From Octopus sinensis (lineage: Eukaryota), in contig NW_021832604.1 in NCBI RefSeq assembly GCF_006345805.1, positions 55,465 through 119,464 on the forward strand: a DNA stretch of 64,000 bases, given 5' to 3'. Shown in pieces: positions 25,977-64,000 of the stretch (within the stretch, counting starts at the first letter, position 1; each line of letters begins with the position of its first letter). A program made the translations under genes and the position numbers. The notes below the pieces were generated by a model. That model was not told the DNA's origin, made no database searches, and was given only the letters and a program-made list of their open reading frames with translations.

Positions 25977-26019
25977 AATCGGACTGACAATATAAATTGA
26001 AATAATTATTTTTAATAAA

Positions 26020-33679: not shown

Positions 33680-36265
33680 TTAGTGCCCCCTGAATAGTGG
33701 GGCAATATTCCGGCAATTCGTACAGACAATCCATTCTTCTGGCACTTTTTTCTGTGTCAGTTCAAGGTAGTAAAAAAATAAATTTTCTCGGATTATGGCT
33801 GCAATGTCGGACTTGTCAGTCAATAAACTATCCCTTCCAAGTGGATTGGAATTATTCCGAAAATCAAACAAAATCATTTCTGTGAAACATCCAAATGTTC
33901 TATCAACCACACGCTCACTGAATTTAGTTATATACTCCTCCTCTATGCCATTCCACACGGCTATGACAACATTTGACATTATGGTGATCAGACTCTCACT
34001 GAGCCCACAAATCTAACAATACTATAACCAAGACAGTCACAGGACAACAAGGCCAAGTCGAACCCAAGTCCAAGGATTCCCCAGTGACCAGTTGATATTG
34101 GTGATTCAATGATGTCAAATCCTCGGTAAAGGGAATATCGAATACCATTTGAGTTGGCTAATAACAATCAACTTTAAGTAAAATACAAGACATCGGTCCG
34201 TAAAGCACACATCCCGTCCCCCAAGCCTCAATAGCCTTCCGAGGGGAGATAAATCTTTGGGAACCAATATTTTGGCATCCTTCCGAATAGGAGGCCGCCT
34301 CGAGTACTAAACTTTTACCAAAAAGTAAACAAACAGAGCACATGGAGGCTGGAACCGACTTTAGAGCAAATACAGGTCCTTTTGTATTCTTCAAATCTCC
34401 AAAAATTTGTGAAATTAAGCCGAGAGCACAGTCCAATTCCAAACAAACGTGTGCATCAATGGCTAGGCAAACTAAGGACGAGTAATAAACCTGCATAAAT
34501 CAGTTGGGAATCACGGAGAGGTCGTCTAGTCCAATCTGAAAGACATTCCGACTTGTCAATTTGACGTCCAAGAACTCGGTAACACAGCCCATTTAATCCA
34601 GAAACTTTTCCCGTGTCTGCACTCCACTTGATATTTAGGATGGTCGGCAGATGACGGTCAGGGTAGACCTTAACTGTATTAATATAATTTGACATGCCTC
34701 TTTGAAACAAGAAAGCATGTCTTTGAGTGATTCTGGGAAGGATGCAGAGTTGGCTCGAACAATGTGGGCGACATCTTCTTTGATAGAGTAACCTGTCAAT
34801 ATAAGAATCTGATGCCACCTATTTTTGTGATTTCCTCGTTGTAGATTATGCGCGACATGAAAAGTTCCCAAGAAGCATGTTGGCGGGATAGGGAGCATAG
34901 ATCCAAGACAAAGACTCTTTTTCCAGTAGCTAACTGCATCACAGCAGAGCAAACGTCGCCGCATCCCATGAAATCAAGGGCGAATTCACTGTCGAAACCA
35001 ATTTTTCTACAATTCTGAAAATAACAAAACACGACAACATTCGAAATAAAATAAGTGATATTCTCCAATTGTTCAGAGGTATTGACAAATTCAATGCTAA
35101 CATCGGCCGGGAGAACATAAAAATCTGCAGGCGGACGGACTTTCCTCTAAAAATAAGCATCAGGTCGACAACCAAATGTTCATATTTTGTTGAATCCGCT
35201 CTATCAAAATGTTCTAAGAACAATCCCCACATTCTTCTGAGTTCAGGAACCGCATCTTCAACCAAATAATTGAAGTCTCGCATTAATTTTTTACGCGGAA
35301 ACACATTCTCCCCATTCATAAAAAAGTACTGCATTTAACAAAATCGAAATACTGCGATATTGTCCAAAAGTGCTTCCAGACTGACTGATTTCTAGAGCGT
35401 GTAAATAAAGGAAATACTTCTGGGGAATCCATGTAGTGGTTCTTCAGTAGGAACCGAATACGGCCGTTGAAACACTGCAGAACCATGTTTGGATGACTTT
35501 CTTAATAATATTTATTTAGGGACTAACCAGGAGGAAATCGATATTTGCGAATAATATTTCTTAACAAATTGGTAAAGATAATTTTCCGTATTTTCTCGAG
35601 TTTCCGATGGGTTTGATTTCTGTCAAATTATTTAAAAGGAAACTTGATCAACTGACAGTCCAAAAACGTCACCACTGATCTCTGCAAATGGGGACTATCT
35701 GCAATCATAGTGATTATCAAATCAGTCTGGTTTGAAAGAAGCAGATTCACTACCACCTAACTAACTCAAAAACCGTTCACCTCCTCTAAAAGCAGGTTGT
35801 CTCTGTTCCTGCTAAGTTTTATTGCCCTGCTCGCCTGAAATAAAATCTAATTATATTTACAGCGATGAAATCATTTTCTTTAATTAGTTTGGAAATAACG
35901 GAGAAGGAATCTTGATTTCTCAAGGATGAAAAATCGAGGAATTGTGACGAAAACTCTGCCAGGTTTTTCGACTTGGAAAGAAGACCAAGTCCCCTAGATA
36001 AGTCTGAGGGACTGATCTTGGCGGTTATAATTGGGCGTTGTTTAAAATAATTAAGTAATGTAAACATTTGTTGAGTGTTAAGCTGGTTTTTCTCTACTAA
36101 AGTAACTTGAGAGAGTATACGAGGCTGACTGTTTGAGGATTCGAGTAAATCAAATATCAATTTGAATGGTTCGCTGGTTTTCCCGAATAAAATTTCCAAG
36201 TATTCTGAACTGAAACAGGTGTTTCTTAAATCAGACAACACGTACAAATAGTTAAATCTATCCAT
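33680..36265 (-). CDS. EXD3: EXD3/mut-7 DEDD 3'-5' exoribonuclease with MUT7-C domain (intact copy)
   Basis: ExoI KIGFDSEF; MQLATGKRVFVLDL; ExoIII DWTRRPLRDSQLIYAAIDA (28-nt intron 34463-34490); MUT7-C LGRLLRLGGRDV, CPICG and terminal CTNC..GH*. Confidence 0.85.
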
Positions 36266-36357
36266 GTGTTTCACGCTCACAAAAAATTATATTTAAATAT
36301 GTATTAATTACATCAATATTGTTGAATAATTTGATGAGCTTTCAGACGTCATGTTTT

Positions 36358-36749
36358 ATGACAAAACTCAGACGGCGGGAAAACACGTGGTTGGGATGTA
36401 AGAAGAAATTTCTTTGTATTCTCTCGAATCATCGAATGCAGTAATTATTCACGAATATGCGAATGAACTATTTTCGCATCCGATTGGCCCATCCAACTAT
36501 GTGAACATTGAACAGGTAAATTCTGGCAGTTTATACTACTGTTTTCACAAATATATACTCTATTATATAGAAATGAAACTCCGGAGCCACTTTTTGGACG
36601 ACGGTTTTTCCAATCAACACCCTGAAATAGATTTGCGCATGTCAAGTTTGGAGGAAAAAGGCTGGGAGGAATACATGGAATACTATTTTCGATACCCAGA
36701 GGGTGTTGCCATGGACGGAAAACTCAAGAAATTTTCCAAGTCAGTATAA
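36358..36749 (+). CDS. Hypothetical protein, head-to-head with EXD3; 3' end unresolved
   Basis: ATG 36358 plus intron gtaag..tgcag joins ORF 36414-36749. No family recognised. Confidence 0.4.
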
Positions 36750-37186
36750 AAAAGAATTTATTTGAGCAATAAACTAAAGAAATATAAACTGGTTGAGTAA
36801 TTGACATTTCATGTGTTCTAATACAGGAGGATTTTTAGGCTTGTAAATGAGTGGGAGTAGCAGGAATATCAAGTTTTTAAGGAACAACCAAACAGACGCT
36901 TAGGAAATTTATTTGGAATCAACTCTGTCGTGGAAAATATATTCCAAAACAATTCCTTTTCCTAGAAAATCAAAAAATCTTGGTTTATATTCCTTTACAG
37001 TACTAAATTGGAATTTTACTAGGTCATTACAATGTATTACATAACCTGGGATAAATAGAAATGATAATCATTACATAAATTGTGACTAATATTATTCCGA
37101 TTTGTCATCTTATTTTAAGTATTTGTTTGAAATAAAATTACAAATTGAGCGAAATCTTGATAAAGATTTATATTAAGTGTTGGCAT

Positions 37187-38015
37187 CGATGTCTCGATAC
37201 TTTCCAAACGGGGTCCCTCAAGGCTCCCCCCTTTCACCAGCCCTGTTCAACTTATTCTTATCGGATCTACCGCTACCAAACGACAAAGACTCAATCATTT
37301 TATCATACGCTGACGATATCGTAATTGTTACCCGGAGCCGTGAGGTGAACACGGCGAGCACAAAACTGCAGAACCACCTTAACAATCTCGAAAGTTGGCT
37401 CTCGCTAAACCGACTATCAACGAGTCCGGAAAAATCGGTCACCACGCTTATGACCTCAGCAAGGAAGCTTGGGAAAACGGTGGTGAACCTGTACCTAAAT
37501 AATATGGAAATCCCGTTTCAAAAATCTCAGAAAATCCTCGGGGTGACTTACGACAGTCATATGTGTTTCTCTCAACAAGTCGATAATATTACTACAAGGT
37601 GCATGAAGAAACTGAACATCTTGAAAGTGTTTCTTCGTAAATGCAGACAGTGTATCAGCTTCCCCGCACGACAAGCCTTATACCGGCAATTCATCGAACC
37701 CTCCCTTAGCTATGCTTTTGAGGCGTGGGAGGGTCTATCAGTGGAACGAACCGCGCTAAAATCGAGAAAACTCAAGATCGCTTCCGAAAAGCACTGCAGG
37801 GACCGAACGAACATCTACTCATCCCCCATTTAAAGAAATCTTGAGAAGAAACCTCGGGGATACAGGGCCTAAAACACCACCACCGCGCCCTCGCAGAAAT
37901 TGTGCCGAGACAAGGGAGGAGCACCGGTCAAAGTTGAGGACCCTCCTCAGAGAAGCCGGGATCACCTGATTAATTAGTTTTATGTTTTGGACGGTGATCT
38001 TGGTTCTAATAATAA
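37187..38015 (+). mobile_element. 5'-truncated LINE (Jockey/I/L2-like RT fragment) with (TAA)n tail and 13-bp TSD
   Basis: GVPQGSPLSPALFN, SYADDI, KILGVTYD. TSD TAAGTGTTGGCAT at 37174-37186 and 38016-38028. Confidence 0.9.
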
Positions 38016-38277
38016 TAAGTGTTGGCATGATTAATTGAGTCACGAAGCACTCACTCGAGCTTATATTCAGCCTGTGGGTATCGGGAAAACATCCGAGCGT
38101 ATGCGTTCAAATCATAAGTTTGGAGTGATCCCATCGGAATAATGCCCAAAGTCTCGGTCGAAAAATGTAGCAACGGAGGAATGTTTGCCGAGTGTGACCA
38201 CTGAGCCAAACTTGAAACAGAAGAGGTCGAAAACATGTAACAGAACAAATAATTTAGTGGTTAAATGTAAGTACATG

Positions 38278-39560
38278 TTAGTGCCAGTCAAGATTGATCT
38301 TGAAGAAAGCGAAAGGATAATAATCTGCTTGCCCGGCCAACTTTATCTGCGTCTCGTCAACCTTTTCATTAGAAATGAAATTCTCGTCGAGCCCCGAATA
38401 CAAATCAAAGAGCACAGTCTTTAACTTTTTGGCAGTTTTTGTAGTCGGATGAAGGACAGTCAGCAGCAACTGGTTGGGAATGCCATACCCGTCATTAATC
38501 AGGAAACACTACCTAAGCACGGATTCAGTGAAAATGCGGAGGATTTTTATGTGGACAAGCGCGGAAAAAGCTTCACTAAAATTGATCCTGAGCCAATTAG
38601 TCAACGGTCTCTGAACAGATGGAGAGGTGGAATGTTACAATAAGAGCGGCCTGTCTCTCCTCCAAAGTAGCCAAGCTATTTCGGTGATTCGCGGCATCCT
38701 CACGTCGATACTCAAACTCGCGGACTATGAATTTTCTTGCTCTGCACTTTGACTTGAAATCGTCGACGACAGTTCTGAAGAGAGTGACAGAATACAGCAT
38801 ATTGTCGTCCTCCTGGAGAATCAACCTGAAGGATGTGAACACTACACATACACCGCGAGGAATCGGGGACCACCATGTCTGTCAGACTGGCATATGAGTT
38901 GAGCCATGCAGCCGAATTGTTTTTGTTGATCACGACGATGAGAGTCACCAAATACTCAGAGTCCAATACCAAATCCTCTTCGGAAAGGACATCGTAGAGA
39001 CTCCGGGACATGAGACCGGCAGTAGCCTTCCTTCGATGTTCTTCCAGACTCGTCTTGACCTTATTGTATTCCCCTCCCCGGTTTTTGAGTTCTCCTTCGA
39101 TATAGTATATCTCCTGTTGTTCGTACTACTATACTTACTTTCTCCAGTAACTCTTTCATTTGACTTGTATTCACTTTTAAGGGATATTTGGCATGGTTCC
39201 ATGAGAATTGTCCGACAAATGCACCCAAACGCACTACAACGTGAGTCCTAGTCCAACCCCCCTCCACCATCAGTCCATCCTCCTCTCCTAGAGTGTTCAA
39301 CAAGTCTCCCAACCGACGGACGACACTAAACTAAACACACAGGATACTTCTCGCACTGAGTGTCCACTCGAGCCAAATCGTCCAAAAGTAGCAATAATTC
39401 GTCAAGACTCCCGAACTAAGATTAGCCTTGCTTTTAGCACTTTGAAATTCGGAATATCCAGCTTGTGCACTGACGACAATTTCTTATTTTCAATTTTCTC
39501 CTTTTGGTCGGAAAGAGTTTGATCATACATGGGCACGGAGACTAACCAATATTCGGACAT
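38278..39560 (-). CDS. ATP6V1C: V-type H+-ATPase subunit C
   Basis: [78 protein letters not shown]. Confidence 0.93.
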
Positions 39561-39744
39561 TCCACCAATAGAGACCACAGAAAAATATTTTTAAATTTTA
39601 TCAAAGCACAATTATAAATTGAGGATTTAATTAATGATTTAATTCTCATTTATTAGTAAAAAATAAAATTCGTTCTCATAGATGCATTGGTGGGTTCCAT
39701 CCCGACGGACAGCTGTTAAATAAGTGTTGGGCAATCAAAGACTC

Positions 39745-41720
39745 TTATCTTTTTAGATTAACACATTTTATCCACGAGGTAAAACTCACCGCTGAACTGT
39801 CGTTGTTTAAGTGATATCTCGGATATTGAATATTCGACAATATTCTAATTTTTAAAATAAATATAATTTTTCCACAAATAAGAGAAATGGAAATTAGAAT
39901 TTGATCATTTGAGAGTATTAACATTGCGAATAGGCTTATCCGTAATCCTGATACTTCGCACATATCGGGAGGATGTTTTGAACTCCGAAGTTACGTTGTT
40001 TCTGTTTCCGTGTTGCCGAAGTCGATAAATACTCCTGCTCTGCCGATAACTCTTTTTGAACGAATCGCATATATTTTTACAAGTCACATTCATGCATTCA
40101 ATATTTTCTACAATGTGGAGAATCATGCGAACCTATTTCCAATTCGTCCGAAATTTCATCGTCTTGAGTTTCATCAAAATCTATTTTGCAAGAAAATAAA
40201 AAAACAATCGAGGAATATATCATCGGATTGTATTTCGCTTGCGAATGCTCGTTTTCTGTAGTCCACGGTGAATCCTCGCAGAAGAAAGTCCTTCAACTTG
40301 TGAGAAATGTTTTCGGGGATATCAGCCAACGGAGGAGAGTGATTGGCGATCTATCATCACACAAGAGGGAATACAATATATTGTAGGGTCTCGATGTGTT
40401 TGCATCGTCTCTCCCATGGATGTGAGCCCGACAGTAAATTGAGCAGAAAACAGGTCGCGGCCCAAACGTCACTTCTGTAGTCAAACGGCTCATTCCGGGC
40501 AACCTGAATAACCGCGAGTAAATACCTCGGGACTCCAATGAGTGGGAGTCCCCGTGATTATCCCAACGTTTTCAATGACGGTCTCGCCATTTGGGATCCT
40601 CCTAGCAAGTCCAAGGTCGATGATTACAAGACGAAGTCCGTCTGCTGAAACCATCACGTTCGAGGCTGATGTTTATGATGGTTACAGACCTTTGATGTCG
40701 CAGTGGACTATGGATAAACTTTGAAGATATTCCAATGCGGAAAATATTTCCAATGCATAGTAGAGAGCCTGATATTCTTCCAGGTGGGAAATTGATTTTA
40801 TTAACTGACTCATGGGGATTCCGTCTATGTACTCCATCAGGATGTAGAGATGACACTCTGCCCGAATAATTCCATATATTTTTATTATATTTTCGTGCCA
40901 CAATTGATAGGAAATTTCCAATTCTTCCGCGTTGAAACGACTCATCTCAGTCTATCACAATCAAACAAATTCTCAACTTTCTTGACTGCGAATATTTTGT
41001 TATTCAAAATATCCTGCGCGAGATACACCGTTCCTTGAGAACCCACTCCCAGTTTGCGGATATACTTAAAATCCACGTTCGGATAATATTTATTATTTTG
41101 TGGCTTGATGTCCGTCACAAAGATTACTCCCTCGTGGCCTTGGAGACATCCTTCGCATTCATCCGAGATTTGGACATGCTGCAGTTCACTCCACATGTTA
41201 ATGTAGTCCTTCAAAACTAAAGTGCTCTAACAATCCGGGTTTACCAGAAGGTTGCTTGGAAATGACTCCGCTGTTAAATATGTCATAAAAGCCACAAAAC
41301 ACATCATTTTTGTAATTCTATCAAATCCTCAATATCAGATTTCACGTATAAAATTTACCAGCGTTTCTGAGTGGGTTTTCACCGATTTTTGACAATTCAA
41401 TTCCTAGAATTAAGAATTCATCGAATTCCATTAAGAACCTGTTTCCTGTCTGTCTTTTTTCTGAAAGATCTTTCGAATGAATTCCATTTTTCTAATATGA
41501 AATTCAATTTGGAATCTTACTTATCTTGAGTCCAACATCAAATTTAGAAACATGTCTTCGAATAATTTTGTTCAATAAATTTCGTAGCATTTGTAGTACA
41601 AATTTTAATCCAAAGCGGTGATGATGTGAAGTTCCTACATTTGAGTAGGAAATATTCAATACCTTTGTTCTTTGAATGTTTAATGCTTTTAGTAATGTTT
41701 AGTTTACGTGAATAATTCAT
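39745..41720 (-). CDS. MAP3K14: Ser/Thr kinase, MAP3K14(NIK)/MAP3K8-like; ends approximate
   Basis: LGVGSQGTVY, FAVKK, FNAEELE, HCDIK, DLG, spliced GTPTHWSPE, DVW..GSHPW. The FxAEEL, GTxTH and HPW motifs resemble NIK. Confidence 0.6.
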
Positions 41721-42087
41721 GGCTTATAAATATGAAATGAGATTAATTTATATTTATTTTAAAATACATAAAATATATTAAAATAAAAATATCTAAAATA
41801 AAAATAGTTTTTAAATTATCTTAACGTTTTTTATATATTTTTGAGTTAAATTCAGTCATGTTTTGAGAACTCAGACAGTTTCTTCTTATCGAGGTAGCGT
41901 TTCTTTGAAGAATGTGAGAGAGACTTTTTGTGGCAAAGTATAATCATCTAAATTTAATATACAATGTAACTTTAAAGAATATGTTAAATTGAAAAAGAAT
42001 TTTCAAAGGAATAAATTAGTTAATGAGGAAATTAATAAATGATAAATAGTTTGCATGTTCTTTTTTCACTTTCTTTGCAACACTTGT

Positions 42088-43170
42088 TAATTGGTGTGCC
42101 ATAAAAGTGGGTGTCGAACATATAGTTCTATTAGAAACAATATAAGAGAGTACTTTATTTTTAGGTACGTGGCTCGAAGGCACGACAGTGATCTTACAGT
42201 CATGTATTCGCTTTATGTACATGTGGAGTTTCGACAGACACAGTATTTTATGGTGTCGGCGTCAACTGGAATGGAGCGGCCATACAATTCGTAATTGGTC
42301 TCACTCCCAGGTTTGCGCATATTATTTAGCAAATCGTCCGAACACACTGATTGGTATTAGTGTTAGATTTATTTATTTACCCCCGGCCCCTTCAATTGAA
42401 GGAAGCCGGTGGCTAACAAGAACGTTAGGGCCAATGTCGGACGCTCCCAAAGATCCCCGATCGTGATCCGGTGTTCCGAGGAAGTAGAAGGCGGGCCTGG
42501 ACAGGAGAAAAGGTCGTTGAGGGAATAGGAAGGGGTTATTTCACCAAGACCGATTTTTATGCGATAATCGTGTAGGCCAGTATGGTGGCCACAGCGGAGA
42601 CGAGCCAAGTTCACTCGGGCTTCTCTTGAGAGGGAGGATTCGATCTTATTATTGGCGGCGGAAGGCGTCCCAGAAGCTTGTTTATTCAAGACATCTGATT
42701 GCCCTCGTAGCCACCAGGTCGTGAATCCCCTTCTGGTTAATGTCCGGAGGGGATCGTATAAGCTTGCGGACTTTGTCCGCGAGGGTCGGAACTATTCTCC
42801 TGTTGTTAGTGGAGTGCCAGAGGAAGTAGCCAGGGTGATTTAGGGTTCGGCATTTAGTGTTAGATTGTTAGGTGGTATTGGCAAAGTTGTCCAAGTTGAC
42901 GAATGCATGTTTTCTAAACGGACAAACAATGCAGGACGGATTCTCCCTCAACAATGGGTGGTTGGGGGAATCTGTCGTGGAAGTAAAGACTGTCTCATCA
43001 AGATGGTTCCAGATCGCTCCAAAAGAACTCTAACCGCCGCAATACAGGAAAATATCGCACAGGGATCAGTGATACACACTGACAAATGGAAGGGTAACTC
43101 CTTCGATGAGCTAATAGATGCCATCGTCAAATTTTGTCCGCCGAATATCACGCTTCGTACTACCAGCTGA
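42088..43170 (+). mobile_element. Merlin (IS1595-like) transposase, intron-containing, internally deleted, interrupted by a LINE
   Basis: CHKSGCRTYSSIRN/STWLEG, LIGGIGKVVQVDECMFSKR, WVVGGICR, VPDRSKRTL, IHTDKWKG, then a jump to C-terminal FDELIDAI. Confidence 0.88.
42370..42853 (-). mobile_element. 5'-truncated LINE 3' end with (TAAA)n tail and 13-bp TSD
   Basis: SREARVNLARLRCGHH C-terminal motif. TSD TTAGTGTTAGATT at 42357-42369 and 42854-42866. Confidence 0.88.
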
Positions 43171-43682
43171 CCTTTTTTATTGTAATAAAGATTTTTTCAC
43201 TGAGGGAATGATGATAAGCATCTTTATTAACCAACAACTGTGTCTTTTTAGACAGGTGGTCGTTAATAGCTCAGATTTAATTTTGTCGGTATTGTTTTGA
43301 CACCACTAAGCCGGTAAAAAATTCAATTTTTTTAAAAAAAAATTAGAATAAAATTTACAAATTCGGCATAGTTTAATTTTTTAAATTTTCGATTTAATAT
43401 TAATAAAAATTTTCATTAATTCATTTAGAGGAAATTGTCCATAGAACACTGGAGTCTCTCGTAGAGGCAAATGGGGGGATCGTGGAAATGGACCACAAAC
43501 CATTCACCGTACCTACAGAAAGTGTGTGGGGTCACAGTCGGAACATCGTGAAAAGATGGCTCGACTGTTGAGAAGTGTCGGAATCACCTGAACGTGTTAG
43601 TTAATGGTTAAGACGGTGATTTTGTTTGGCTTAAATAATAATAATAAGAGGCTTCGTGCAGGATGAAATGCAACAGTACCAA

Positions 43683-44190
43683 TTTTTTTAGTAAATCTGA
43701 ATTTATTAAAAGAAGATTAGAAAAGGGAGAAGGATTGTTTAAGACTACGCAGGTTAGGGCGCCCTCTCAGCCTTACGGATTGCGAAGCAGTTGCCGCGGA
43801 TTACGGCAATGGAGAGGCGTTGAAAAAGCCAAAAGGACTCTCTCGAGTCGTCCCTCCTTTTGGCGATTCTTCTCCCCAAATTGCGTAGGAAACAAAGCGA
43901 CTTGCGGCCTAAGACTCCAGAGGTCTCAACGGCGATGCGCGTGAAAACGAAGCTGGAGAGGTGACCGTATTTCAGGATTTTGAGATCTTCAGCGCGATTG
44001 GAATCAAAGCCTGGGTCGACGTCAGACCTGGCTAGGTTCCCGTTGGAGAATGTGTCACAGCAAGTGGAATCCCATATAAGAGATTTTCCCTGCTTAAAGG
44101 GGAATGTAGTTAAGCCGTCAGGGCGTTTGCCGTCATTTCTGTCCAAACCGACCGGTTCGAGGACGGACGGCACCCCGGGGCTTCGAGGGA
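43683..44190 (-). mobile_element. CRE-clade 3' fragment with short A-tail
   Basis: GVPSVLEPVGLDRNDGKRPDGLTTFPF..WLFQRLSIAVIRGN. Confidence 0.88.
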
Positions 44191-44309
44191 ACAAAGGTAA
44201 TAATTATTATGAGTTTTTACTTTTATTTAAGATTTACACCAATTTTTGCTGGCATACCATAATTTTTGACGATAAACTCAATAAACTATTTCACTAATCA
44301 CTTTTTCTG

Positions 44310-45680: not shown

Positions 45681-45974
45681 ATAATGGTTAATTATCATTT
45701 ATTTATTGTCAACAATTGACCTTAGTTAACTTTGATGTAATAGATTATTTTTATTTTTGACAATCATTGACATTGATAGATCGCTCTCAACGCTCGCGAC
45801 ATATCATTATTTTGGGATTAATTTTTACAATAAGAGAACCAATAAATTTCAATAAGCGACAAAAAACTTTCCTACAGAACCACAAATAATCAAAATTATC
45901 GATAAAAAAGCACGTTGGATTTACCAGCGAGACTTCTTTTGACTTTAAAGAATTTTGATTTTAAAAATTATATA

Positions 45975-47443: not shown

Positions 47444-47819
47444 TAATTAGGCTTTTCAGTCACCTGATTTCAATTCAATTTATTATGTTTGAGCAATGAT
47501 AAAAAGTAAATTATTGCAAAATCCGTCGAAAAATTTTAAAGATTTATAAATAAAATTTTTTGAAATATGAGAATCAATACCGAAAAAATACTTGAAAATT
47601 TAGTTATGTCTATTTTGGAAGAAATTTATGAAGACAATAAAAGTTTGGAAGTTTATGAAGACATGGAGGAATATCAACTTTTTAAATTTTAATTTGTTTT
47701 ATAAAAATAAAAAAACTGATAGGCTGACGATAAGGCCTGGTTTTGCTAATTTATGAAATAATCAAATCATTAATTTTCCAGATTAAAAGGAAAAAAATTA
47801 TTATTTAAACATATTATTA

Positions 47820-54133: not shown

Positions 54134-54725
54134 TAGGGTTAGGGTTAGAATTAGGGTAGGGTAAGGGTTAATGTTAGGGATAGGGTTAAATTTAGGGTTT
54201 CGGTTAGGGATAGGGTTAGAGTTAGGGTTAAGGGTTAGGGTTTCGGTTAGGGATAGGGTTAGAGTTAGGGATAGGGTTAAGGTTAGGGTTTCGGTTAGGG
54301 ATAGGGTTAGAGTTAGGGATAGGGTTAAGGGTTAGGGTTTCGGTTAGGGATAGGGTTAGAGTTAGGGATAGGGTTAAGGGTTAGGGTTAGGGTTTCGGTT
54401 AGGGATAGGGTTAGAGTTAGGGATAGGGTTAGGGTTAGGGTTAGGGTTTCGGTTAGGGATAGGGTTAGAGTTAGGGATAGGGTTAAGGGTTAGGGTTTCG
54501 GTTAGGGATAGGGTTAGAGTTAGGGATAGGGTTAAGGGTTAGGGTTAGGGTTTCGGTTAGGGATAGGGTTAGAGTTAGGGATAGGGTTAAAAGTTAGGGT
54601 TAGGGTTAGGGTTAGGGTTAGGGTTAGAGTTAGGGTTAGGGTTAGGGTTAGGGTTAGAGTTAGGGTTAGGGTTAGGGTTAGGGTTAGGGTTAGGGTTAGG
54701 GTTAGGGTTAGGGTTAGGGTTAGGG
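54131..54725 (+). repeat. Telomeric (TTAGGG)n tract: degenerate start, 8 higher-order variant units, ~130 bp of almost pure repeat
   Basis: Read directly; variants TTTCGG, ATAGGG, TTAGAG, TTAAGGG. Confidence 0.98.
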
Positions 54726-56696
54726 AGGCCGCCTCGAGTACTAAACTTTTACCAAAAAGTAAACAAACAGAGCACATGGAGGCTGGAACCGACTTTAGAG
54801 CAAATACAGGTCCTTTTGTATTCTTCAAATCTCCAAAAATTTGTGAAATTAAGCCGAGAGCACAGTCCAATTCCAAACAAACGTGTGCATCAATGGCTAG
54901 GCAAACTAAGGACGAGTAATAAACCTGCATAAATCAGTTGGGAATCACGGAGAGGTCGTCTAGTCCAATCTGAAAGACATTCCGACTTGTCAATTTGACG
55001 TCCAAGAACTCGGTAACACAGCCCATTTAATCCAGAAACTTTTCCCGTGTCTGCACTCCACTTGATATTTAGGATGGTCGGCAGATGACGGTCAGGGTAG
55101 ACCTTCACTGTATTAATAAATTTGACATGCCTCTTTGAAACAAGAAAGCATGTCTTTGAGTGATTCTGGGAAGGATGCAGAGTTGGCTCGAACAATGTGG
55201 GCGACATCTTCTTTGATAGAGTAACCTGTCAATATAAGAATCTGATGCCACCTATTTTTGTGATTCCTCGTTGTAGATTATGTGCGACATGAAAAGTTCC
55301 CAAGAAGCATGTTGGCGGGATAGGGAGCATAGATCCAAGACAAAGACTCTTTTCCCAGTAGCTAACTGCATCACAGCAGAGCAAACGTCGCCGCATCCCA
55401 TGAATCAAGGGCGAATTCACTGTCGAAACCAATTTTTCTACAATTCTGAAAATAACAAAACACGACAACATTCGAAATAAAATAAGTGATATTCTCCAAT
55501 TGTTCAGAGGTATTGACAAATTCAATGCTAACATCGGCCGGGAGAACATAAAAATCTGCAGGCGGACGGACTTTCCTCTAAAAATAAGCATCAGGTCGAC
55601 AACCAAATGTTCATATTTTGTTGAATCCGCTCTATCAAAATGTTCTAAAAACAATCCCCACATTCTTCTGAGTTCAGGAACCGCATCTTCAACCAAAAAT
55701 ATTGAAGTCTCGCATTAATTTTTTACGCGGAAACACATTCTCCCCATTCATAAAAAGTACTGCATTTAACAAAATCAAAATACTGCGATATTGTCCAAAA
55801 GTGCTTCCAGACTGACTGATTTCTAGAGCGTGTAAATAAAGGAAATACTTCTGGGGAATCCATGTAGTGGTTCTTCAGTAGGAACCGAATACGGCCGTTG
55901 AAACACTGCAGAACCATGTTTGGATGACTTTCTTAATAATATTTATTTAGGGACTAACCAGGGGGAAATCGATATTTGCGAATAATATTTCTTAACAAAT
56001 TGGTAAAGATAATTTTCCGTATTTTCTCGAGTTTCCGATGGGTTTGATTTCTGTCAAATTATTTAAAAGGAAACTTGATCAACTGACAGTCCAAAAACGT
56101 CACCACTGATCTCTGCAAATGGGGAATATCTGCAATCATAGTGATTATCAAATCAGTTTGGTTTGAAAGAAGCAGATTCACTACCACCTAACTAACTCAA
56201 AAACCGTTCACCTCCTCTAAAAGCAGGTTGTCTCTGTTCCTGCTAAGTTTTATTGCCCTGCTCGCCTGAAATAAAATCTAATTATATTTACAGCGATGAA
56301 ATCATTTTCTTTAATTAGTTTGGAAATAACGGAGGAGGAATCTTGATTTCTCAAGGATGAAAAATCGAGGAATTGTGACGAAAACTCTGCCAGGTTTTTC
56401 GACTTGGAAAGAAGACCAAGTCCCCTAGATAAGTCTGAGGGACTGATCTTGGCGGTTATAATTGGGCGTTGTTTAAAATAATTAAGTAATGTAAACATTT
56501 GTTGAGTGTTAAGCTGGTTTTTCTCTACTAAAGTAACTTGAGAAAGTATACGAGGCTGACTGTTTGAGGATTCGAGTAAATCAAATATCAATTTGAATGG
56601 TTCGCTGGTTTTCCCGAATAAAATTTCCAAGTATTCTGAACTGAAACAGGTGTTTCTTAAATCAGACAACACGTACAAATAGTTAAATCTATCCAT
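54726..56696 (-). pseudogene. EXD3: EXD3 second copy, 3'-truncated by the telomeric tract, with apparent frameshifts
   Basis: Same exons as copy 1 down to YSRRP, then CCC TAA. One-nt deletions relative to copy 1 near 55265 and 55403 shift the exonuclease frame. Confidence 0.8.
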
Positions 56697-57617
56697 GTGT
56701 TTCACGCTCACAAAAAATTATATTTAAATATGTATTAATTACATCAATATTGTTGAATAATTTGATGAGCTTTCAGACGTCATGTTTTATGACAAAACTC
56801 AGACGGCGGGAAAACACGTGGTTGGGATGTAAGAAGAAATTTCTTTGTATTCTCTCGAATCATCGAATGCAGTAATTATTCACGAATATGCGAATGAACT
56901 ATTTTCGCATCCGATTGGCCCATCCAACTATGTGAACATTGAACAGGTAAATTCTGGCAGTTTATACTACTGTTTTCACAAATATATACTCTATTATATA
57001 GAAATGAAACTCCGGAGCCACTTTTTGGACGACGGTTTTTCCAATCAACACCCTGAAATAGATTTGCGCATGTCAAGTTTGGAGGAAAAAGGCTGGGAGG
57101 AATACATGGAATACTATTTTCGATACCCAGAGGGTGTTGCCATGGACGGAAAACTCAAGAAATTTTCCAAGTCAGTATAAAAAAGAATTTATTTGAGCAA
57201 TAAACTAAAGAAATATAAACTGGTTGAGTAATTGACATTTCATGTGTTCTAATACAGGAGGATTTTTAGGCTTGTAAATGAGTGGGAGTAGCAGGAATAT
57301 CAAGTTTTTAAGGAACAACCAAACAGACGCTTAGGAAATTTATTTGGAATCAACTCTGTCGTGGAAAATATATTCCAAAACAATTCCTTTTCCTAGAAAA
57401 TCAAAAAATCTTGGTTTATATTCCTTTACAGTACTAAATTGGAATTTTACTAGGTCATTACAATGTATTACATAACCTGGGATAAATAGAAATGATAATC
57501 ATTACATAAATTGTGACTAATATTATTCCGATTTGTCATCTTATTTTAAGTATTTGTTTGAAATAAAATTACAAATTGAGCGAAATCTTGATAAAGATTT
57601 ATATTAAGTGTTGGCAT

Positions 57618-58447
57618 CGATGTCTCGATACTTTCCAAACGGGGTCCCTCAAGGCTCCCCCCTTTCACCAGCCCTGTTCAACTTATTCTTATCGGATCTA
57701 CCGCTACCAAACGACAAAGACTCAATCATTTTATCATACGCTGACGATATCGTAATTGTTACCCGGAGCCGTGAGGTGAACACGGCGAGCACAAAACTGC
57801 AGAACCACCTTAACAATCTCGAAAGTTGGCTCTCGCTAAACCGACTATCAACGAGTCCGGAAAAATCGGTCACCACGCTTATGACCTCAGCAAGGAAGCT
57901 TGGGAAAACGGTGGTGAACCTGTACCTAAATAATATGGAAATCCCGTTTCAAAAATCTCAGAAAATCCTCGGGGTGACTTACGACAGTCATATGTGTTTC
58001 TCTCAACAAGTCGATAATATTACTACAAGGTGCATGAAGAAACTGAACATCTTGAAAGTGTTTCTTCGTAAATGCAGACAGTGTATCAGCTTCCCCGCAC
58101 GACAAGCCTTATACCGGCAATTCATCGAACCCTCCCTTAGCTATGCTTTTGAGGCGTGGGGAGGGTCTATCAGTGGAACGAACCGCGCTAAAATCGAGAA
58201 AACTCAAGATCGCTTCCGAAAAGCACTGCAGGGACCGAACGAACATCTACTCATCCCCCATTTAAAGAAATCTTGAGAAGAAACCTCGGGGATACAGGGC
58301 CTAAAACACCACCACCGCGCCCTCGCAGAAATTGTGCCGAGACAAGGGAGGAGCACCGGTCAAAGTTGAGGACCCTCCTCAGAGAAGCCGGGATCACCTG
58401 ATTAATTAGTTTTATGTTTTGGACGGTGATCTTGGTTCTAATAATAA
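57618..58447 (+). mobile_element. Duplicate of LINE fragment 37187-38015
   Basis: Identical apart from one extra G near 58160. Confidence 0.9.
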
Positions 58448-58709
58448 TAAGTGTTGGCATGATTAATTGAGTCACGAAGCACTCACTCGAGCTTATATTC
58501 AGCCTGTGGGTATCGGGAAAACATCCGAGCGTATGCGTTCAAATCATAAGTTTGGAGTGATCCCATCGGAATAATGCCCAAAGTCTCGGTCGAAAAATGT
58601 AGCAACGGAGGAATGTTTGCCGAGTGTGACCACTGAGCCAAACTTGAAACAGAAGAGGTCGAAAACATGTAACAGAACAAATAATTTAGTGGTTAAATGT
58701 AAGTACATG

Positions 58710-59992
58710 TTAGTGCCAGTCAAGATTGATCTTGAAGAAAGCGAAAGGATAATAATCTGCTTGCCCGGCCAACTTTATCTGCGTCTCGTCAACCTTTTCA
58801 TTAGAAATGAAATTCTCGTCGAGCCCCGAATACAAATCAAAGAGCACAGTCTTTAACTTTTTGGCAGTTTTTGTAGTCGGATGAAGGACAGTCAGCAGCA
58901 ACTGGTTGGGAATGCCATACCCGTCATTAATCAGGAAACACTACCTAAGCACGGATTCAGTGAAAATGCGGAGGATTTTTATGTGGACAAGCGCGGAAAA
59001 AGCTTCACTAAAATTGATCCTGAGCCAATTAGTCAACGGTCTCTGAACAGATGGAGAGGTGGAATGTTACAATAAGAGCGGCCTGTCTCTCCTCCAAAGT
59101 AGCCAAGCTATTTCGGTGATTCGCGGCATCCTCACGTCGATACTCAAACTCGCGGACTATGAATTTTCTTGCTCTGCACTTTGACTTGAAATCGTCGACG
59201 ACAGTTCTGAAGAGAGTGACAGAATACAGCATATTGTCGTCCTCCTGGAGAATCAACCTGAAGGATGTGAACACTACACATACACCGCGAGGAATCGGGG
59301 ACCACCATGTCTGTCAGACTGGCATATGAGTTGAGCCATGCAGCCGAATTGTTTTTGTTGATCACGACGATGAGAGTCACCAAATACTCAGAGTCCAATA
59401 CCAAATCCTCTTCGGAAAGGACATCGTAGAGACTCCGGGACATGAGACCGGCAGTAGCCTTCCTTCGATGTTCTTCCAGACTCGTCTTGACCTTATTGTA
59501 TTCCCCTCCCCGGTTTTTGAGTTCTCCTTCGATATAGTATATCTCCTGTTGTTCGTACTACTATACTTACTTTCTCCAGTAACTCTTTCATTTGACTTGT
59601 ATTCACTTTTAAGGGATATTTGGCATGGTTCCATGAGAATTGTCCGACAAATGCACCCAAACGCACTACAACGTGAGTCCTAGTCCAACCCCCCTCCACC
59701 ATCAGTCCATCCTCCTCTCCTAGAGTGTTCAACAAGTCTCCCAACCGACGGACGACACTAAACTAAACACACAGGATACTTCTCGCACTGAGTGTCCACT
59801 CGAGCCAAATCGTCCAAAAGTAGCAATAATTCGTCAAGACTCCCGAACTAAGATTAGCCTTGCTTTTAGCACTTTGAAATTCGGAATATCCAGCTTGTGC
59901 ACTGACGACAATTTCTTATTTTCAATTTTCTCCTTTTGGTCGGAAAGAGTTTGATCATACATGGGCACGGAGACTAACCAATATTCGGACAT
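58710..59992 (-). CDS. ATP6V1C: V-ATPase subunit C, second copy
   Basis: ORF translations identical to 38278-39560. Confidence 0.9.
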
Positions 59993-60176
59993 TCCACCAA
60001 TAGAGACCACAGAAAAATATTTTTAAATTTTATCAAAGCACAATTATAAATTGAGGATTTAATTAATGATTTAATTCTCATTTATTAGTAAAAAATAAAA
60101 TTCGTTCTCATAGATGCATTGGTGGGTTCCATCCCGACGGACAGCTGTTAAATAAGTGTTGGGCAATCAAAGACTC

Positions 60177-62152
60177 TTATCTTTTTAGATTAACACATTT
60201 TATCCACGAGGTAAAACTCACCGCTGAACTGTCGTTGTTTAAGTGATATCTCGGATATTGAATATTCGACAATATTCTAATTTTTAAAATAAATATAATT
60301 TTTCCACAAATAAGAGAAATGGAAATTAGAATTTGATCATTTGAGAGTATTAACATTGCGAATAGGCTTATCCGTAATCCTGATACTTCGCACATATCGG
60401 GAGGATGTTTTGAACTCCGAAGTTACGTTGTTTCTGTTTCCGTGTTGCCGAAGTCGATAAATACTCCTGCTCTGCCGATAACTCTTTTTGAACGAATCGC
60501 ATATATTTTTACAAGTCACATTCATGCATTCAATATTTTCTACAATGTGGAGAATCATGCGAACCTATTTCCAATTCGTCCGAAATTTCATCGTCTTGAG
60601 TTTCATCAAAATCTATTTTGCAAGAAAATAAAAAAACAATCGAGGAATATATCATCGGATTGTATTTCGCTTGCGAATGCTCGTTTTCTGTAGTCCACGG
60701 TGAATCCTCGCAGAAGAAAGTCCTTCAACTTGTGAGAAATGTTTTCGGGGATATCAGCCAACGGAGGAGAGTGATTGGCGATCTATCATCACACAAGAGG
60801 GAATACAATATATTGTAGGGTCTCGATGTGTTTGCATCGTCTCTCCCATGGATGTGAGCCCGACAGTAAATTGAGCAGAAAACAGGTCGCGGCCCAAACG
60901 TCACTTCTGTAGTCAAACGGCTCATTCCGGGCAACCTGAATAACCGCGAGTAAATACCTCGGGACTCCAATGAGTGGGAGTCCCCGTGATTATCCCAACG
61001 TTTTCAATGACGGTCTCGCCATTTGGGATCCTCCTAGCAAGTCCAAGGTCGATGATTACAAGACGAAGTCCGTCTGCTGAAACCATCACGTTCGAGGCTG
61101 ATGTTTATGATGGTTACAGACCTTTGATGTCGCAGTGGACTATGGATAAACTTTGAAGATATTCCAATGCGGAAAATATTTCCAATGCATAGTAGAGAGC
61201 CTGATATTCTTCCAGGTGGGAAATTGATTTTATTAACTGACTCATGGGGATTCCGTCTATGTACTCCATCAGGATGTAGAGATGACACTCTGCCCGAATA
61301 ATTCCATATATTTTTATTATATTTTCGTGCCACAATTGATAGGAAATTTCCAATTCTTCCGCGTTGAAACGACTCATCTCAGTCTATCACAATCAAACAA
61401 ATTCTCAACTTTCTTGACTGCGAATATTTTGTTATTCAAAATATCCTGCGCGAGATACACCGTTCCTTGAGAACCCACTCCCAGTTTGCGGATATACTTA
61501 AAATCCACGTTCGGATAATATTTATTATTTTGTGGCTTGATGTCCGTCACAAAGATTACTCCCTCGTGGCCTTGGAGACATCCTTCGCATTCATCCGAGA
61601 TTTGGACATGCTGCAGTTCACTCCACATGTTAATGTAGTCCTTCAAAACTAAAGTGCTCTAACAATCCGGGTTTACCAGAAGGTTGCTTGGAAATGACTC
61701 CGCTGTTAAATATGTCATAAAAGCCACAAAACACATCATTTTTGTAATTCTATCAAATCCTCAATATCAGATTTCACGTATAAAATTTACCAGCGTTTCT
61801 GAGTGGGTTTTCACCGATTTTTGACAATTCAATTCCTAGAATTAAGAATTCATCGAATTCCATTAAGAACCTGTTTCCTGTCTGTCTTTTTTCTGAAAGA
61901 TCTTTCGAATGAATTCCATTTTTCTAATATGAAATTCAATTTGGAATCTTACTTATCTTGAGTCCAACATCAAATTTAGAAACATGTCTTCGAATAATTT
62001 TGTTCAATAAATTTCGTAGCATTTGTAGTACAAATTTTAATCCAAAGCGGTGATGATGTGAAGTTCCTACATTTGAGTAGGAAATATTCAATACCTTTGT
62101 TCTTTGAATGTTTAATGCTTTTAGTAATGTTTAGTTTACGTGAATAATTCAT
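60177..62152 (-). CDS. MAP3K14: MAP3K14/MAP3K8-like kinase, second copy
   Basis: ORF translations identical to 39745-41720. Confidence 0.6.
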
Positions 62153-62519
62153 GGCTTATAAATATGAAATGAGATTAATTTATATTTATTTTAAAATACA
62201 TAAAATATATTAAAATAAAAATATCTAAAATAAAAATAGTTTTTAAATTATCTTAACGTTTTTTATATATTTTTGAGTTAAATTCAGTCATGTTTTGAGA
62301 ACTCAGACAGTTTCTTCTTATCGAGGTAGCGTTTCTTTGAAGAATGTGAGAGAGACTTTTTGTGGCAAAGTATAATCATCTAAATTTAATATACAATGTA
62401 ACTTTAAAGAATATGTTAAATTGAAAAAGAATTTTCAAAGGAATAAATTAGTTAATGAGGAAATTAATAAATGATAAATAGTTTGCATGTTCTTTTTTCA
62501 CTTTCTTTGCAACACTTGT

Positions 62520-63602
62520 TAATTGGTGTGCCATAAAAGTGGGTGTCGAACATATAGTTCTATTAGAAACAATATAAGAGAGTACTTTATTTTTAGGTAC
62601 GTGGCTCGAAGGCACGACAGTGATCTTACAGTCATGTATTCGCTTTATGTACATGTGGAGTTTCGACAGACACAGTATTTTATGGTGTCGGCGTCAACTG
62701 GAATGGAGCGGCCATACAATTCGTAATTGGTCTCACTCCCAGGTTTGCGCATATTATTTAGCAAATCGTCCGAACACACTGATTGGTATTAGTGTTAGAT
62801 TTATTTATTTACCCCCGGCCCCTTCAATTGAAGGAAGCCGGTGGCTAACAAGAACGTTAGGGCCAATGTCGGACGCTCCCAAAGATCCCCGATCGTGATC
62901 CGGTGTTCCGAGGAAGTAGAAGGCGGGCCTGGACAGGAGAAAAGGTCGTTGAGGGAATAGGAAGGGGTTATTTCACCAAGACCGATTTTTATGCGATAAT
63001 CGTGTAGGCCAGTATGGTGGCCACAGCGGAGACGAGCCAAGTTCACTCGGGCTTCTCTTGAGAGGGAGGATTCGATCTTATTATTGGCGGCGGAAGGCGT
63101 CCCAGAAGCTTGTTTATTCAAGACATCTGATTGCCCTCGTAGCCACCAGGTCGTGAATCCCCTTCTGGTTAATGTCCGGAGGGGATCGTATAAGCTTGCG
63201 GACTTTGTCCGCGAGGGTCGGAACTATTCTCCTGTTGTTAGTGGAGTGCCAGAGGAAGTAGCCAGGGTGATTTAGGGTTCGGCATTTAGTGTTAGATTGT
63301 TAGGTGGTATTGGCAAAGTTGTCCAAGTTGACGAATGCATGTTTTCTAAACGGACAAACAATGCAGGACGGATTCTCCCTCAACAATGGGTGGTTGGGGG
63401 AATCTGTCGTGGAAGTAAAGACTGTCTCATCAAGATGGTTCCAGATCGCTCCAAAAGAACTCTAACCGCCGCAATACAGGAAAATATCGCACAGGGATCA
63501 GTGATACACACTGACAAATGGAAGGGTAACTCCTTCGATGAGCTAATAGATGCCATCGTCAAATTTTGTCCGCCGAATATCACGCTTCGTACTACCAGCT
63601 GA
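62520..63602 (+). mobile_element. Second copy of the Merlin transposase with nested LINE (62802-63285)
   Basis: Matches 42088-43170. Confidence 0.88.
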
Positions 63603-64000
63603 CCTTTTTTATTGTAATAAAGATTTTTTCACTGAGGGAATGATGATAAGCATCTTTATTAACCAACAACTGTGTCTTTTTAGACAGGTGGTCGTTAATA
63701 GCTCAGATTTAATTTTGTCGGTATTGTTTTGACACCACTAAGCCGGTAAAAAATTCAATTTTTTTAAAAAAAAATTAGAATAAAATTTACAAATTCGGCA
63801 TAGTTTAATTTTTTAAATTTTCGATTTAATATTAATAAAAATTTTCATTAATTCATTTAGAGGAAATTGTCCATAGAACACTGGAGTCTCTCGTAGAGGC
63901 AAATGGGGGGATCGTGGAAATGGACCACAAACCATTCACCGTACCTACAGAAAGTGTGTGGGGTCACAGTCGGAACATCGTGAAAAGATGGCTCGACTGT

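What the first reader, a model, noticed from the sequence alone, without database searches (positions are those of the whole stretch)
34288..64000. A chromosome end looped back on itself: 20.4-kb tandem unit joined through a telomere at a TAGG microhomology
Seen: the layout is A - B(34292-54130) - (TTAGGG)n - B'(54726 onward). The G-strand polarity and the variant-to-pure gradient make the tract the right-hand end of B, not a cap on B'. Copy 1 reads GAATAGG|AGGCC and the junction reads TTAGGG|AGGCC. Established: telomeric 3' G-overhangs can invade homologous DNA and prime break-induced or rolling-circle synthesis. Inference: the overhang invaded a 4-nt seed 20 kb inward and re-copied the whole subtelomere, or B plus telomere exists as a 20.43-kb circle. 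That would amplify several genes (ATP6V1C, the kinase and, if the copy is complete, SLC5A7). Extrachromosomal circles and DNA elimination are, from recall, reported for dicyemids; verify this and the taxon. An assembly misjoin is the main alternative.
Basis: partly seen in the sequence, partly recalled or inferred. Interest (0 to 1): 0.9.

Follow-up and report, generated by a model that had tools for sequence, protein, structure and literature searches.

The report
Subtelomere re-copied after internal telomere tract
At the end of an unplaced contig from a dicyemid-like parasite inside a cephalopod-sized assembly, a short telomere tract is followed by a second copy of the sequence 20.4 kb upstream; this resembles known subtelomeric duplications, but without reads an assembly error cannot be ruled out.

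Summary
The layout is real in the sequence. Window 34290-43568 recurs at 54724-64000 (99.82% over 9281 nt), just after a 596-nt TTAGGG tract with chromosome-end polarity and a variant-to-pure gradient.

Three corrections:
- The window end is the contig end, so only 9.3 kb of a second copy exists. No full 20.4-kb unit or second telomere is shown.
- The junction overlap is GG (2 nt), not TAGG.
- The transporter gene lies outside the re-copied part.

The two copies differ at 17 sites, 16 of them in one 1.44-kb island. Both copies carry private states, so B' is not a verbatim re-use of B.

The contig comes from a very divergent animal with 27-nt introns, which fits a dicyemid. It is an unplaced contig in a 2.72-Gb assembly.

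The re-copied sequence occurs nowhere else in the assembly, and I found no second example of this layout.

My best reading (about 0.45) is a genuine direct terminal duplication with an interstitial telomere tract. It would arise by end joining of a short telomere to an internal break, or by microhomology-primed copying. This kind is known from yeast Y' arrays, human subtelomeres and ALT templates.

An assembly artefact (about 0.3) and a circular form (about 0.12) remain open. Raw reads would decide.

The parts
1..34289 (.). A: single-copy flank. It includes an NSF (vesicle-fusing ATPase) gene on the minus strand at about 26941-28590, with tiny in-frame introns.
   Evidence: Self-BLAST finds no other long repeat. 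NSF identification.
33695..34439 (.). Old non-coding dispersed repeat that runs across the breakpoint at 34289/34290. It shows that A|B is the ancestral join.
   Evidence: It is 74% identical to C12597:158567-159253 without a break at 34291, and has stops in all frames.
34290..43568 (+). B1: the first copy of the re-copied 9.28 kb. It holds a 3'-5' exonuclease gene, a reverse-transcriptase fragment, the V-ATPase subunit C gene and a protein kinase.
   Evidence: It occurs nowhere else in the assembly except as B'.
34672..36113 (.). Island holding 16 of the 17 B/B' differences: 11 substitutions (8 of them transitions) and 5 indels. The first 380 nt after the junction and the last 5.8 kb are identical between copies.
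   Evidence: The clustering has P of about 1e-12.
34456..36286 (-). 3'-5' exonuclease (DEDD-type) gene region. One exon (34796-35146) is open in B and frameshifted in B' by a one-base deletion at the B' position matching 34971.
38278..39330 (-). V-ATPase subunit C gene, in several exons that cover profile positions 64-370.
39745..41226 (-). Protein kinase gene. The start of the kinase domain lies at 40942-41226; the lower bound of the gene is approximate.
   Evidence: This is a weak hit that falls below the Pfam cut-off.
43569..54129 (+). B2: the rest of the terminal segment, present once in the assembly. It holds transposon fragments, a sodium:solute symporter gene (47820-49353, minus strand) and a young LINE.
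51307..54059 (+). Young non-LTR retroelement with an open 864-aa reverse-transcriptase frame (51307-53901). Its 3' end lies at 54034-54059, which is 71-95 nt before the telomere tract. At least 17 copies at 96-100% identity sit on other unplaced contigs. None of the seven copies whose flanks were read is followed by telomere repeats.
54130..54589 (+). Telomere-derived variant array: nine copies of a ~49-55-nt higher-order unit (TTTCGG TTAGGG ATAGGG TTAGAG TTAGGG ATAGGG TTAAGGG TTAGGG). It is unique to this contig.
54590..54725 (+). Near-pure G-strand telomere repeats. The last 11 units are perfect.
54724..54725 (.). Derived junction. GG is the only sequence shared between the telomere side and the A side.
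54724..64000 (+). B': the second copy of B1, cut off by the end of contig C9075. The contig end falls in a patchwork of interspersed repeats.

Best explanation
The telomere|B' junction is a real DNA join present in at least part of the sampled parasite population. A chromosome end carrying only a short telomere became linked in direct orientation to a point 20.4 kb inward on a sister or homologous copy. That telomere had about 460 nt of fossil variant repeats plus about 22 canonical units.

The result is a direct subtelomeric duplication with an interstitial telomere tract: A-B-tel-B...

The 2-nt GG overlap points to one of two routes. One is end joining of an eroded telomere to the broken end of a terminal fragment. 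The other is microhomology-primed copying (MMBIR/BIR) from the telomeric 3' end.

Shown: the layout, the polarity, the derived status of the junction, the 2-nt overlap, and the non-identity of the copies. Inferred: that reads span the junction, that the second copy is complete and capped, and which joining mechanism acted.
For: - B1 is single-copy in the 2.72-Gb assembly apart from B'. So the contig can only have been built from at least one read that physically joins the telomere tract to B1. No telomere-like sequence precedes B1 in A that could cause a false overlap.
- My rough estimate for a random library chimera landing in the same 20 kb of a minor-component genome, on the same strand, is about 1 in a million per chimeric read. 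This is an inference, not a measurement.
- The copies are not verbatim. There are 17 differences with private states on both sides. B' carries a frameshift in an exon that is open in B. At 37727 B carries a deletion where B' keeps the GGGG state found in 7 of 8 other copies of that transposon.
- The differences sit in a 1.44-kb island at 1.1%. That is close to the 1.24% heterozygosity reported for Dicyema japonicum (PMC6736024), as expected if B' comes from another haplotype or an older copy.
- Only 11 perfect units precede the junction. Fusions of eroded telomeres look like this.
- Precedents exist. Yeast Y' tandem copies are separated by ITS of 20 to about 500 bp (PMC13177704). In Chlamydomonas telomerase mutants, a foreign fragment was joined to a telomere through 4-bp microhomology in a subpopulation of reads (bioRxiv 10.1101/2023.01.23.525193).
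Against: - No reads, read depth or second assembly were available.
- The contig stops 9.3 kb into B', which is what the overhang of one or a few junction reads would also give.
- The last 5.8 kb of B' is identical to B, so most of B' may be consensus borrowed from B.
- Five one-base indels cluster just after the junction, which suggests thin read support there.
- No second example of the layout was found among the other telomere runs on unplaced contigs.
- B is not found at any other chromosome end.
Confidence: 0.45

Rival explanations
1. Assembly artefact. The true structure is A-B-telomere(end). B' is the overhang of one chimeric or mis-corrected long read that was appended at the contig end and later polished against reads from B.
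For: - The window end is the contig end.
- C9075 is an unplaced contig of a minor-component organism, so coverage may be low and chimera filters weak.
- The last 5.8 kb of B' is identical to B.
- Indels, including a frameshift in a conserved exon, cluster in B' soon after the junction.
- The contig stops in a repeat patchwork.
- No other contig continues from B'.
Against: - A random chimera would have to pick the same 20-kb locus and the same strand out of 2.7 Gb.
- The known PacBio and ONT self-chimeras are inverted, not direct.
- The junction and the first 380 nt of B' are clean. The differences form an island rather than decaying away from the junction.
- B also carries a private error or derived state.
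- 8 of the 11 substitutions are transitions, at a density close to heterozygosity. That looks like real variation more than long-read noise.
Confidence: 0.3
2. B plus its telomere tract also exists as a 20.43-kb extrachromosomal circle, or as a rolling-circle product. The terminal fragment would have been released by a break at 34289/34290 and closed on its own short telomere. The assembler then merged reads from the circle with reads from the chromosome.
For: - The graph A->B->tel->B is exactly what a mixture of chromosome and circle would give.
- Dicyemid somatic cells are reported to eliminate chromatin and to form circular DNAs (PMC6543705, citing Noto et al. 2003 and Awata et al. 2006).
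- The 2-nt overlap fits end joining.
Against: - The reported dicyemid circles are about 0.5-1.6 kb, non-coding or mitochondrial (PMC6543705).
- A circle cut from the same chromosome should be identical to B, unless it derives from the other haplotype.
- B carries essential-looking genes (V-ATPase C, a kinase), which are unlikely material for elimination.
- There is no topological evidence of any kind.
Confidence: 0.12
3. The tract is an old interstitial telomeric sequence at the edge of a segmental duplication. In this reading B' is a 9.3-kb or longer paralogous copy that continues into other, unassembled sequence, so 54725 is not a present-day chromosome end.
For: - Only B1 is seen twice.
- Most of the tract is a fossil higher-order variant array that telomerase would not make.
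- This organism has another degenerate ITS, at C9495:348080-348330.
- The copies differ by 1.1% locally.
Against: - The distal 11 units are perfect and the gradient runs the right way for a live or recently live end.
- 7.4 kb of the copy shows only one difference.
- No contig carries a continuation.
Confidence: 0.1

Closest known systems
Saccharomyces cerevisiae subtelomeric Y' tandem arrays with interstitial telomeric sequences, and Y' circles
   Same: A multi-kb, gene-bearing subtelomeric unit is repeated head to tail at a chromosome end. A short telomere tract with terminal polarity sits between the copies; the yeast ITS run from 20 to about 500 bp (PMC13177704). BIR and circular intermediates are invoked for the amplification, as the same paper reviews.
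   Different: Y' is a family present at many chromosome ends, with its own ARS and helicase ORF, and it recombines through long homology. Here the unit is single-locus and is made of ordinary cellular genes plus transposon debris. The junction has only 2 nt of overlap.
Telomere-to-break joins and subtelomeric duplicon boundaries (human subtelomeric ITS; Chlamydomonas telomerase-mutant rearrangements)
   Same: A non-telomeric fragment is joined distal to a shortened telomere through a few bases of microhomology, leaving a short ITS. In Chlamydomonas this was seen in a subpopulation of reads (bioRxiv 10.1101/2023.01.23.525193). From my own knowledge, human subtelomeric blocks are bounded by (TTAGGG)n with terminal polarity and are attributed to end joining (Linardopoulou et al. 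2005).
   Different: In those cases the distal block usually comes from another chromosome. Here it comes from the same chromosome end, 20.4 kb inward, which gives a direct tandem layout.
ALT template amplification (C. elegans TALT, mouse mTALT) and roll-and-spread from telomeric circles in Kluyveromyces lactis (recalled from my own knowledge, not re-read here)
   Same: Arrays of unit plus telomere repeats are built at chromosome ends by recombination-dependent copying.
   Different: Those templates are flanked by telomere repeats at their source locus and spread to many or all ends in many copies. Here A|B has no telomere repeat, only one end is involved and there are at most 1.45 copies.
False duplications at contig ends in long-read assemblies
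   Same: The duplicated block abuts a contig end, and most of it is identical to the first copy.
   Different: Typical false duplications are adjacent haplotype or overlap copies. This one is separated from the first copy by 11 kb of unique sequence and a telomere tract, and it needs a physical telomere-to-B1 read.

Membership tests
Y'-type subtelomeric tandem array with ITS | A telomere tract with terminal polarity lies between head-to-tail copies of the unit | tested here: met
   A 596-nt G-strand tract lies between B and B'.
Y'-type subtelomeric tandem array with ITS | At least two complete units, the last one capped by a terminal telomere | not testable with these tools
   The contig ends 9.28 kb into the second copy.
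Y'-type subtelomeric tandem array with ITS | The same unit is present at several chromosome ends | tested here: not met
   B1 occurs only on C9075. The variant telomere array is unique to it as well.
ALT template (TALT/mTALT-like) | The source unit is flanked by telomere-like repeats on both sides | tested here: not met
   There is no telomere-like sequence at the A|B boundary.
Telomere-to-break end joining / MMBIR junction | 0-4 nt of microhomology at the junction, with a shortened telomere on the proximal side | tested here: met
   The overlap is GG. Only 11 perfect units, about 22 near-canonical, precede the junction.
Telomere-to-break end joining / MMBIR junction | The junction is present on native DNA molecules | not testable with these tools
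   No reads were available. The argument rests on the single-copy status of B1.
Dicyemid extrachromosomal circular DNA | Circular topology | not testable with these tools
   This needs exonuclease treatment, 2D gels or reads longer than one unit.
Dicyemid extrachromosomal circular DNA | Size and content of the described circles: about 0.5-1.6 kb, non-coding or mitochondrial | tested here: not met
   The unit would be 20.43 kb and carries nuclear genes. The reference description is in PMC6543705.
Programmed chromosome breakage with de novo telomere addition | The new telomere caps the retained fragment, so a C-strand tract would lie on the left of B' | tested here: not met
   The tract reads TTAGGG towards B', which is the wrong polarity for a cap on B'.
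Terminal retrotransposon arrays (HeT-A/TART; Athena/Terminon-type) | The repeated unit is a retroelement whose 3' end faces the centromere and abuts telomere repeats | tested here: not met
   The LINE next to the tract reads towards the telomere, and the copies whose flanks were read are dispersed without telomere repeats. B' starts inside an old repeat, not at an element end, and keeps genomic introns.
Assembly false duplication | The second copy is a verbatim or purely error-laden re-use of the same reads | tested here: inconclusive
   There are 17 differences with private states in both copies. However, 7.4 kb of the copy carries only one difference.
Assembly false duplication | No spanning reads, and halved depth on both copies | not testable with these tools
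   No read data were available.
Dicyemida (taxon of the contig) | Spliceosomal introns of about 27 nt; fast-evolving proteins; GC about 37%; LINE-rich genome | tested here: met
   NSF has a 27-nt and an approximately 30-nt in-frame intron bearing stops. Identity to any other NSF is 47-48%. GC profile is and the LINE families. References: PMC6543705, PMC6736024. There was no direct match to a named dicyemid sequence, so the assignment stays circumstantial.

The most novel reading that the evidence does not exclude
The terminal 20.4 kb plus its telomere tract is excised or copied as a telomere-bearing circle, or as a rolling-circle array, during the somatic genome rearrangements reported for dicyemids. 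That would make it the first large, gene-carrying, telomere-containing extrachromosomal element in this phylum, and it would link chromosome-end processing to dicyemid chromatin elimination.
Probability: 0.1. Interest if true: 0.7.

Novelty: new member of a known kind. Interest (0 to 1): 0.35.

Why it matters
If the junction is real, it is a sequence-resolved case of a chromosome end re-copying or recapturing its own subtelomere in a dicyemid. It would come with a precise 2-nt junction and an eroded telomere. Dicyemid genome rearrangements are reported but poorly resolved at sequence level, so this locus would offer a concrete PCR-testable marker to compare germline and somatic cells.

If it is an artefact, two practical lessons remain. 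This 2.72-Gb assembly carries contigs of a parasite among its unplaced sequences. And gene copy numbers at this contig end (V-ATPase C, the kinase, the exonuclease) should not be trusted.

Tried and rejected
- **Polarising the 17 differences with the C12597 paralogue.** It covers only 32845-34439, so it stops short of the island of differences. It did show that A|B is ancestral.
- **Looking for a haplotig or a continuation of B'.** There is none.
- **Looking for the variant telomere array at other ends.** It is unique to this contig.
- **Checking contig ends for telomeres.** I read both ends of eight parasite-type contigs and the left end of C9075. There were no terminal arrays. The only find was a degenerate ITS on C9495 with no re-copy.
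- **Listing every run of five or more TTAGGG units that ends in a non-T base.**
  - There are 126.
  - The 13 other unplaced contigs that carry such runs share no repeats with the parasite loci, so they look host-derived.
As a result the distal flanks of the + strand hits and C9075:1-55464 were never read.
- **De novo telomere addition on B'.** Rejected because the polarity is wrong.
- **Reverse transcription of an mRNA primed by the telomere.** Rejected because there is no T-run at the junction and B' spans 9.3 kb of genomic sequence across several genes and transposon fragments.
- **A giant terminal retroelement.** Rejected on the LINE's orientation, the single-copy status of B, and the fact that the start of B' lies inside an old repeat.
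- **Inverted repeats at the breakpoint.** None of note.
- **A second protein search aimed at finding the junction in independent datasets.** Not run, because the NSF search had shown no other source of this organism in that database.
Full report
**What is in the sequence**

The tract at window 54130-54725 is 596 nt of TTAGGG-type repeats on the + strand. Directly after it, from 54724/54726, the sequence repeats what lies at 34290 onward. The match covers 9281 aligned positions at 99.82% identity, with 11 substitutions and 6 one-base indels, and it is the only long self-match in the window.

The G-strand reads towards B'. The tract therefore has the polarity of the right-hand end of the sequence on its left, not that of a cap on B'.

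The tract has two parts:
- The proximal ~460 nt are nine copies of a ~49-55-nt higher-order unit built from variant hexamers.
- The distal part reads (TTAGGG)5 TTAGAG (TTAGGG)4 TTAGAG (TTAGGG)11.

The share of bases in perfect units rises from 0.36 to 0.94 along the tract. This variant array occurs nowhere else in the assembly.

**Corrections to the finding**

- *Extent.* The window is G000:C9075:55465-119464 and the contig is 119,464 nt long, so the window end is the contig end. Only 9.28 kb of a second copy exists. A complete 20.4-kb unit, a second telomere and further rounds are not observed.
- *Microhomology.* Going leftward from the junction, the A side (..AATAGG) and the telomere side (..TTAGGG) share only GG. 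A telomere end paired at TAGG would have given TTAGG|AGGCC, which has one G fewer than is observed.
- *Genes.* The re-copied part holds the 3'-5' exonuclease gene, a reverse-transcriptase fragment, the V-ATPase C gene and a kinase. The sodium:solute symporter at 47820-49353 lies outside it.

**Which junction is derived**

A 74%-identical stretch on C12597 aligns without a break to window 33695-34439, which spans the point 34291. It has stops in every frame, so it is an old dispersed repeat rather than a gene. A|B is therefore the ancestral arrangement and telomere|B' the new one. The breakpoint lies inside this old repeat, about 165 nt from the exonuclease gene. It has no notable inverted repeat.

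**Whose DNA this is**

G000 is 2.72 Gb in 13,516 sequences, with chromosome-scale scaffolds longer than 130 Mb. C9075 is an unplaced contig.

Several features point to a dicyemid:
- Its NSF gene is only 47-48% identical to any eukaryotic NSF.
- That gene is interrupted by a 27-nt and an approximately 30-nt in-frame insert carrying stop codons. This is the dicyemid intron signature, with a median of 27 bp (PMC6543705).
- GC content and the load of young LINEs match Dicyema japonicum: 67.5 Mb, 36.7% GC, 49% repeats and 1.24% heterozygosity (PMC6736024).
- Every repeat-family match I saw was on another unplaced contig.

It remains circumstantial, because no named dicyemid sequence was matched. 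From memory only, the assembly size and sequence count resemble a published octopus assembly. I did not verify this.

**The end of B**

The last 1.9 kb or more before the tract is a young non-LTR retroelement with an open 864-aa reverse-transcriptase frame (51307-53901). It ends at 54034-54059. At least 17 other copies at 96-100% identity are dispersed, and none of the seven whose flanks were read is followed by telomere repeats. The element reads towards the telomere, which is opposite to telomere-primed retroelements. It is therefore a bystander. The 71-95 nt between it and the tract are unique.

**The differences between the copies**

Sixteen of the 17 differences lie in 34672-36113, a span of 1442 nt (P about 1e-12). 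The first 380 nt after the junction and the last 5.8 kb are identical. The differences therefore form an island rather than decaying away from the junction.

Eight of the 11 substitutions are transitions. The local density of 1.1% is close to the species-level heterozygosity reported for D. japonicum (PMC6736024).

Both copies carry private states:
- B' has a one-base deletion that breaks an exonuclease exon which is open in B.
- At 37727, B has a one-base deletion where B' keeps the GGGG state found in 7 of 8 other copies of that transposon.

So B' is not simply B re-used, nor simply a noisier B. The pattern fits junction-bearing molecules from another haplotype or an older copy, with the rest of B' homogenised by shared reads. 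It does not prove that.

**Is the junction physically real?**

B1 is single-copy in the whole assembly apart from B', and nothing telomere-like precedes it in A. No overlap-based assembler could therefore write TTAGGG|AGGCC without at least one read that carries it.

A random ligation chimera would have to pick the same 20-kb locus of a minor-component genome on the same strand. I estimate that at about 1e-6 per chimeric read. This is an inference. The self-chimeras typical of PacBio and ONT are inverted, not direct. This makes an in vivo molecule the more likely source.

Against that:
- The contig stops 9.3 kb after the junction, inside a repeat patchwork, as the overhang of one or a few reads would.
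- No contig continues from B'.
- Five indels cluster soon after the junction.
- I found no second example. The 126 telomere runs that end in a non-T base are mostly on host-like scaffolds. The 13 other unplaced contigs with such runs share no repeats with parasite loci.

Some distal flanks and the first 55 kb of the contig were therefore not read.

**Mechanism**

A direct A-B-tel-B layout arises most simply in one of two ways:
- A short, uncapped telomere is joined to the broken end of a terminal fragment (B-tel) released from the sister chromatid or the homologue.
- The telomeric 3' end primes copying at a microhomology 20.4 kb inward (MMBIR/BIR).

The 2-nt overlap and the mere 11 perfect units before the junction fit both. 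They do not favour homology-driven invasion. Closing the released fragment on itself would give a 20.43-kb circle with the same junction.

De novo telomere addition is excluded by polarity. Telomere-primed reverse transcription of an mRNA is excluded because there is no T-run and B' spans 9.3 kb of genomic sequence across several genes and transposon fragments.

**Comparison with what is known**

- Yeast Y' elements form tandem subtelomeric copies separated by ITS of 20 to about 500 bp, with BIR and circles implicated (PMC13177704).
- In Chlamydomonas telomerase mutants, a subpopulation of reads shows a foreign fragment joined to a telomere through 4-bp microhomology, leaving a short ITS (bioRxiv 10.1101/2023.01.23.525193).
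- From my own knowledge, human subtelomeric duplicon boundaries and ALT templates (TALT, mTALT) are of the same kind.

This case differs in three ways: it is single-locus, it is built of ordinary genes, and it re-copies its own chromosome end.

Dicyemid chromatin elimination and circular DNAs are reported. The circles described so far are about 0.5-1.6 kb and are non-coding or mitochondrial (PMC6543705), so membership in that class is not supported.

**Verdict**

My estimates are:
- genuine direct terminal duplication with an interstitial telomere tract: about 0.45;
- assembly artefact: about 0.3;
- circular form: about 0.12;
- old ITS at the edge of a segmental duplication: about 0.1.

If it is real, it is a new member of a known kind in an unusual phylum. 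Reads would settle the question in an afternoon.

Noticed in passing
whole window; G000 contig C9075: The contig appears to come from a dicyemid-like parasite, with 27-nt introns and an NSF only 47-48% identical to any eukaryote. It sits as an unplaced contig in a 2.72-Gb cephalopod-sized assembly. Many other unplaced contigs share its repeat families, so a sizeable parasite genome may be embedded in that assembly.
   Followed up: partly
window 42367-42855: This ~490-nt element has at least 10 copies at 100% identity on other unplaced contigs, which suggests very recent mobility. Its type was not determined.
   Followed up: no
window 51307-54059: A young non-LTR retroelement family with an open 864-aa reverse-transcriptase frame. 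At least 17 copies at 96-100% identity exist, so the family may still be active.
   Followed up: partly
window 26941-28590 (minus strand): The NSF gene reads in one frame through two short inserts of 27 and about 30 nt that contain stop codons. These are in-frame mini-introns.
   Followed up: partly
L032:8430-8690 (G000:C9495:348080-348330): A degenerate CCCTAA-like interstitial tract of about 260 nt lies 1.4 kb from a contig end in a parasite-type contig. No re-copied flank was seen.
   Followed up: partly
G000:C9495:323222-325645 (L034): A ~2.4-kb satellite-like array whose self-matches are offset by multiples of about 85 nt.
   Followed up: no
G000 scaffolds C1:75.755-75.774 Mb, C2:206.267 Mb, C6:66.53 Mb, C7:101.41 Mb, C10:56.74 Mb, C17:16.65 Mb: Multi-kb TTAGGG arrays lie deep inside the chromosome-scale scaffolds. 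They could be large interstitial telomeric blocks of the host or telomeric contigs misplaced during scaffolding.
   Followed up: no
window 17640-17715: A 36-nt tandem repeat, 2.1 copies at 95% identity, in the A region.
   Followed up: no
window 55264 and 55403 (B' copy of the exonuclease gene): One-base deletions break the exonuclease reading frame in B', while B is open at the matching sites. These are either consensus errors or a decaying duplicate.
   Followed up: partly
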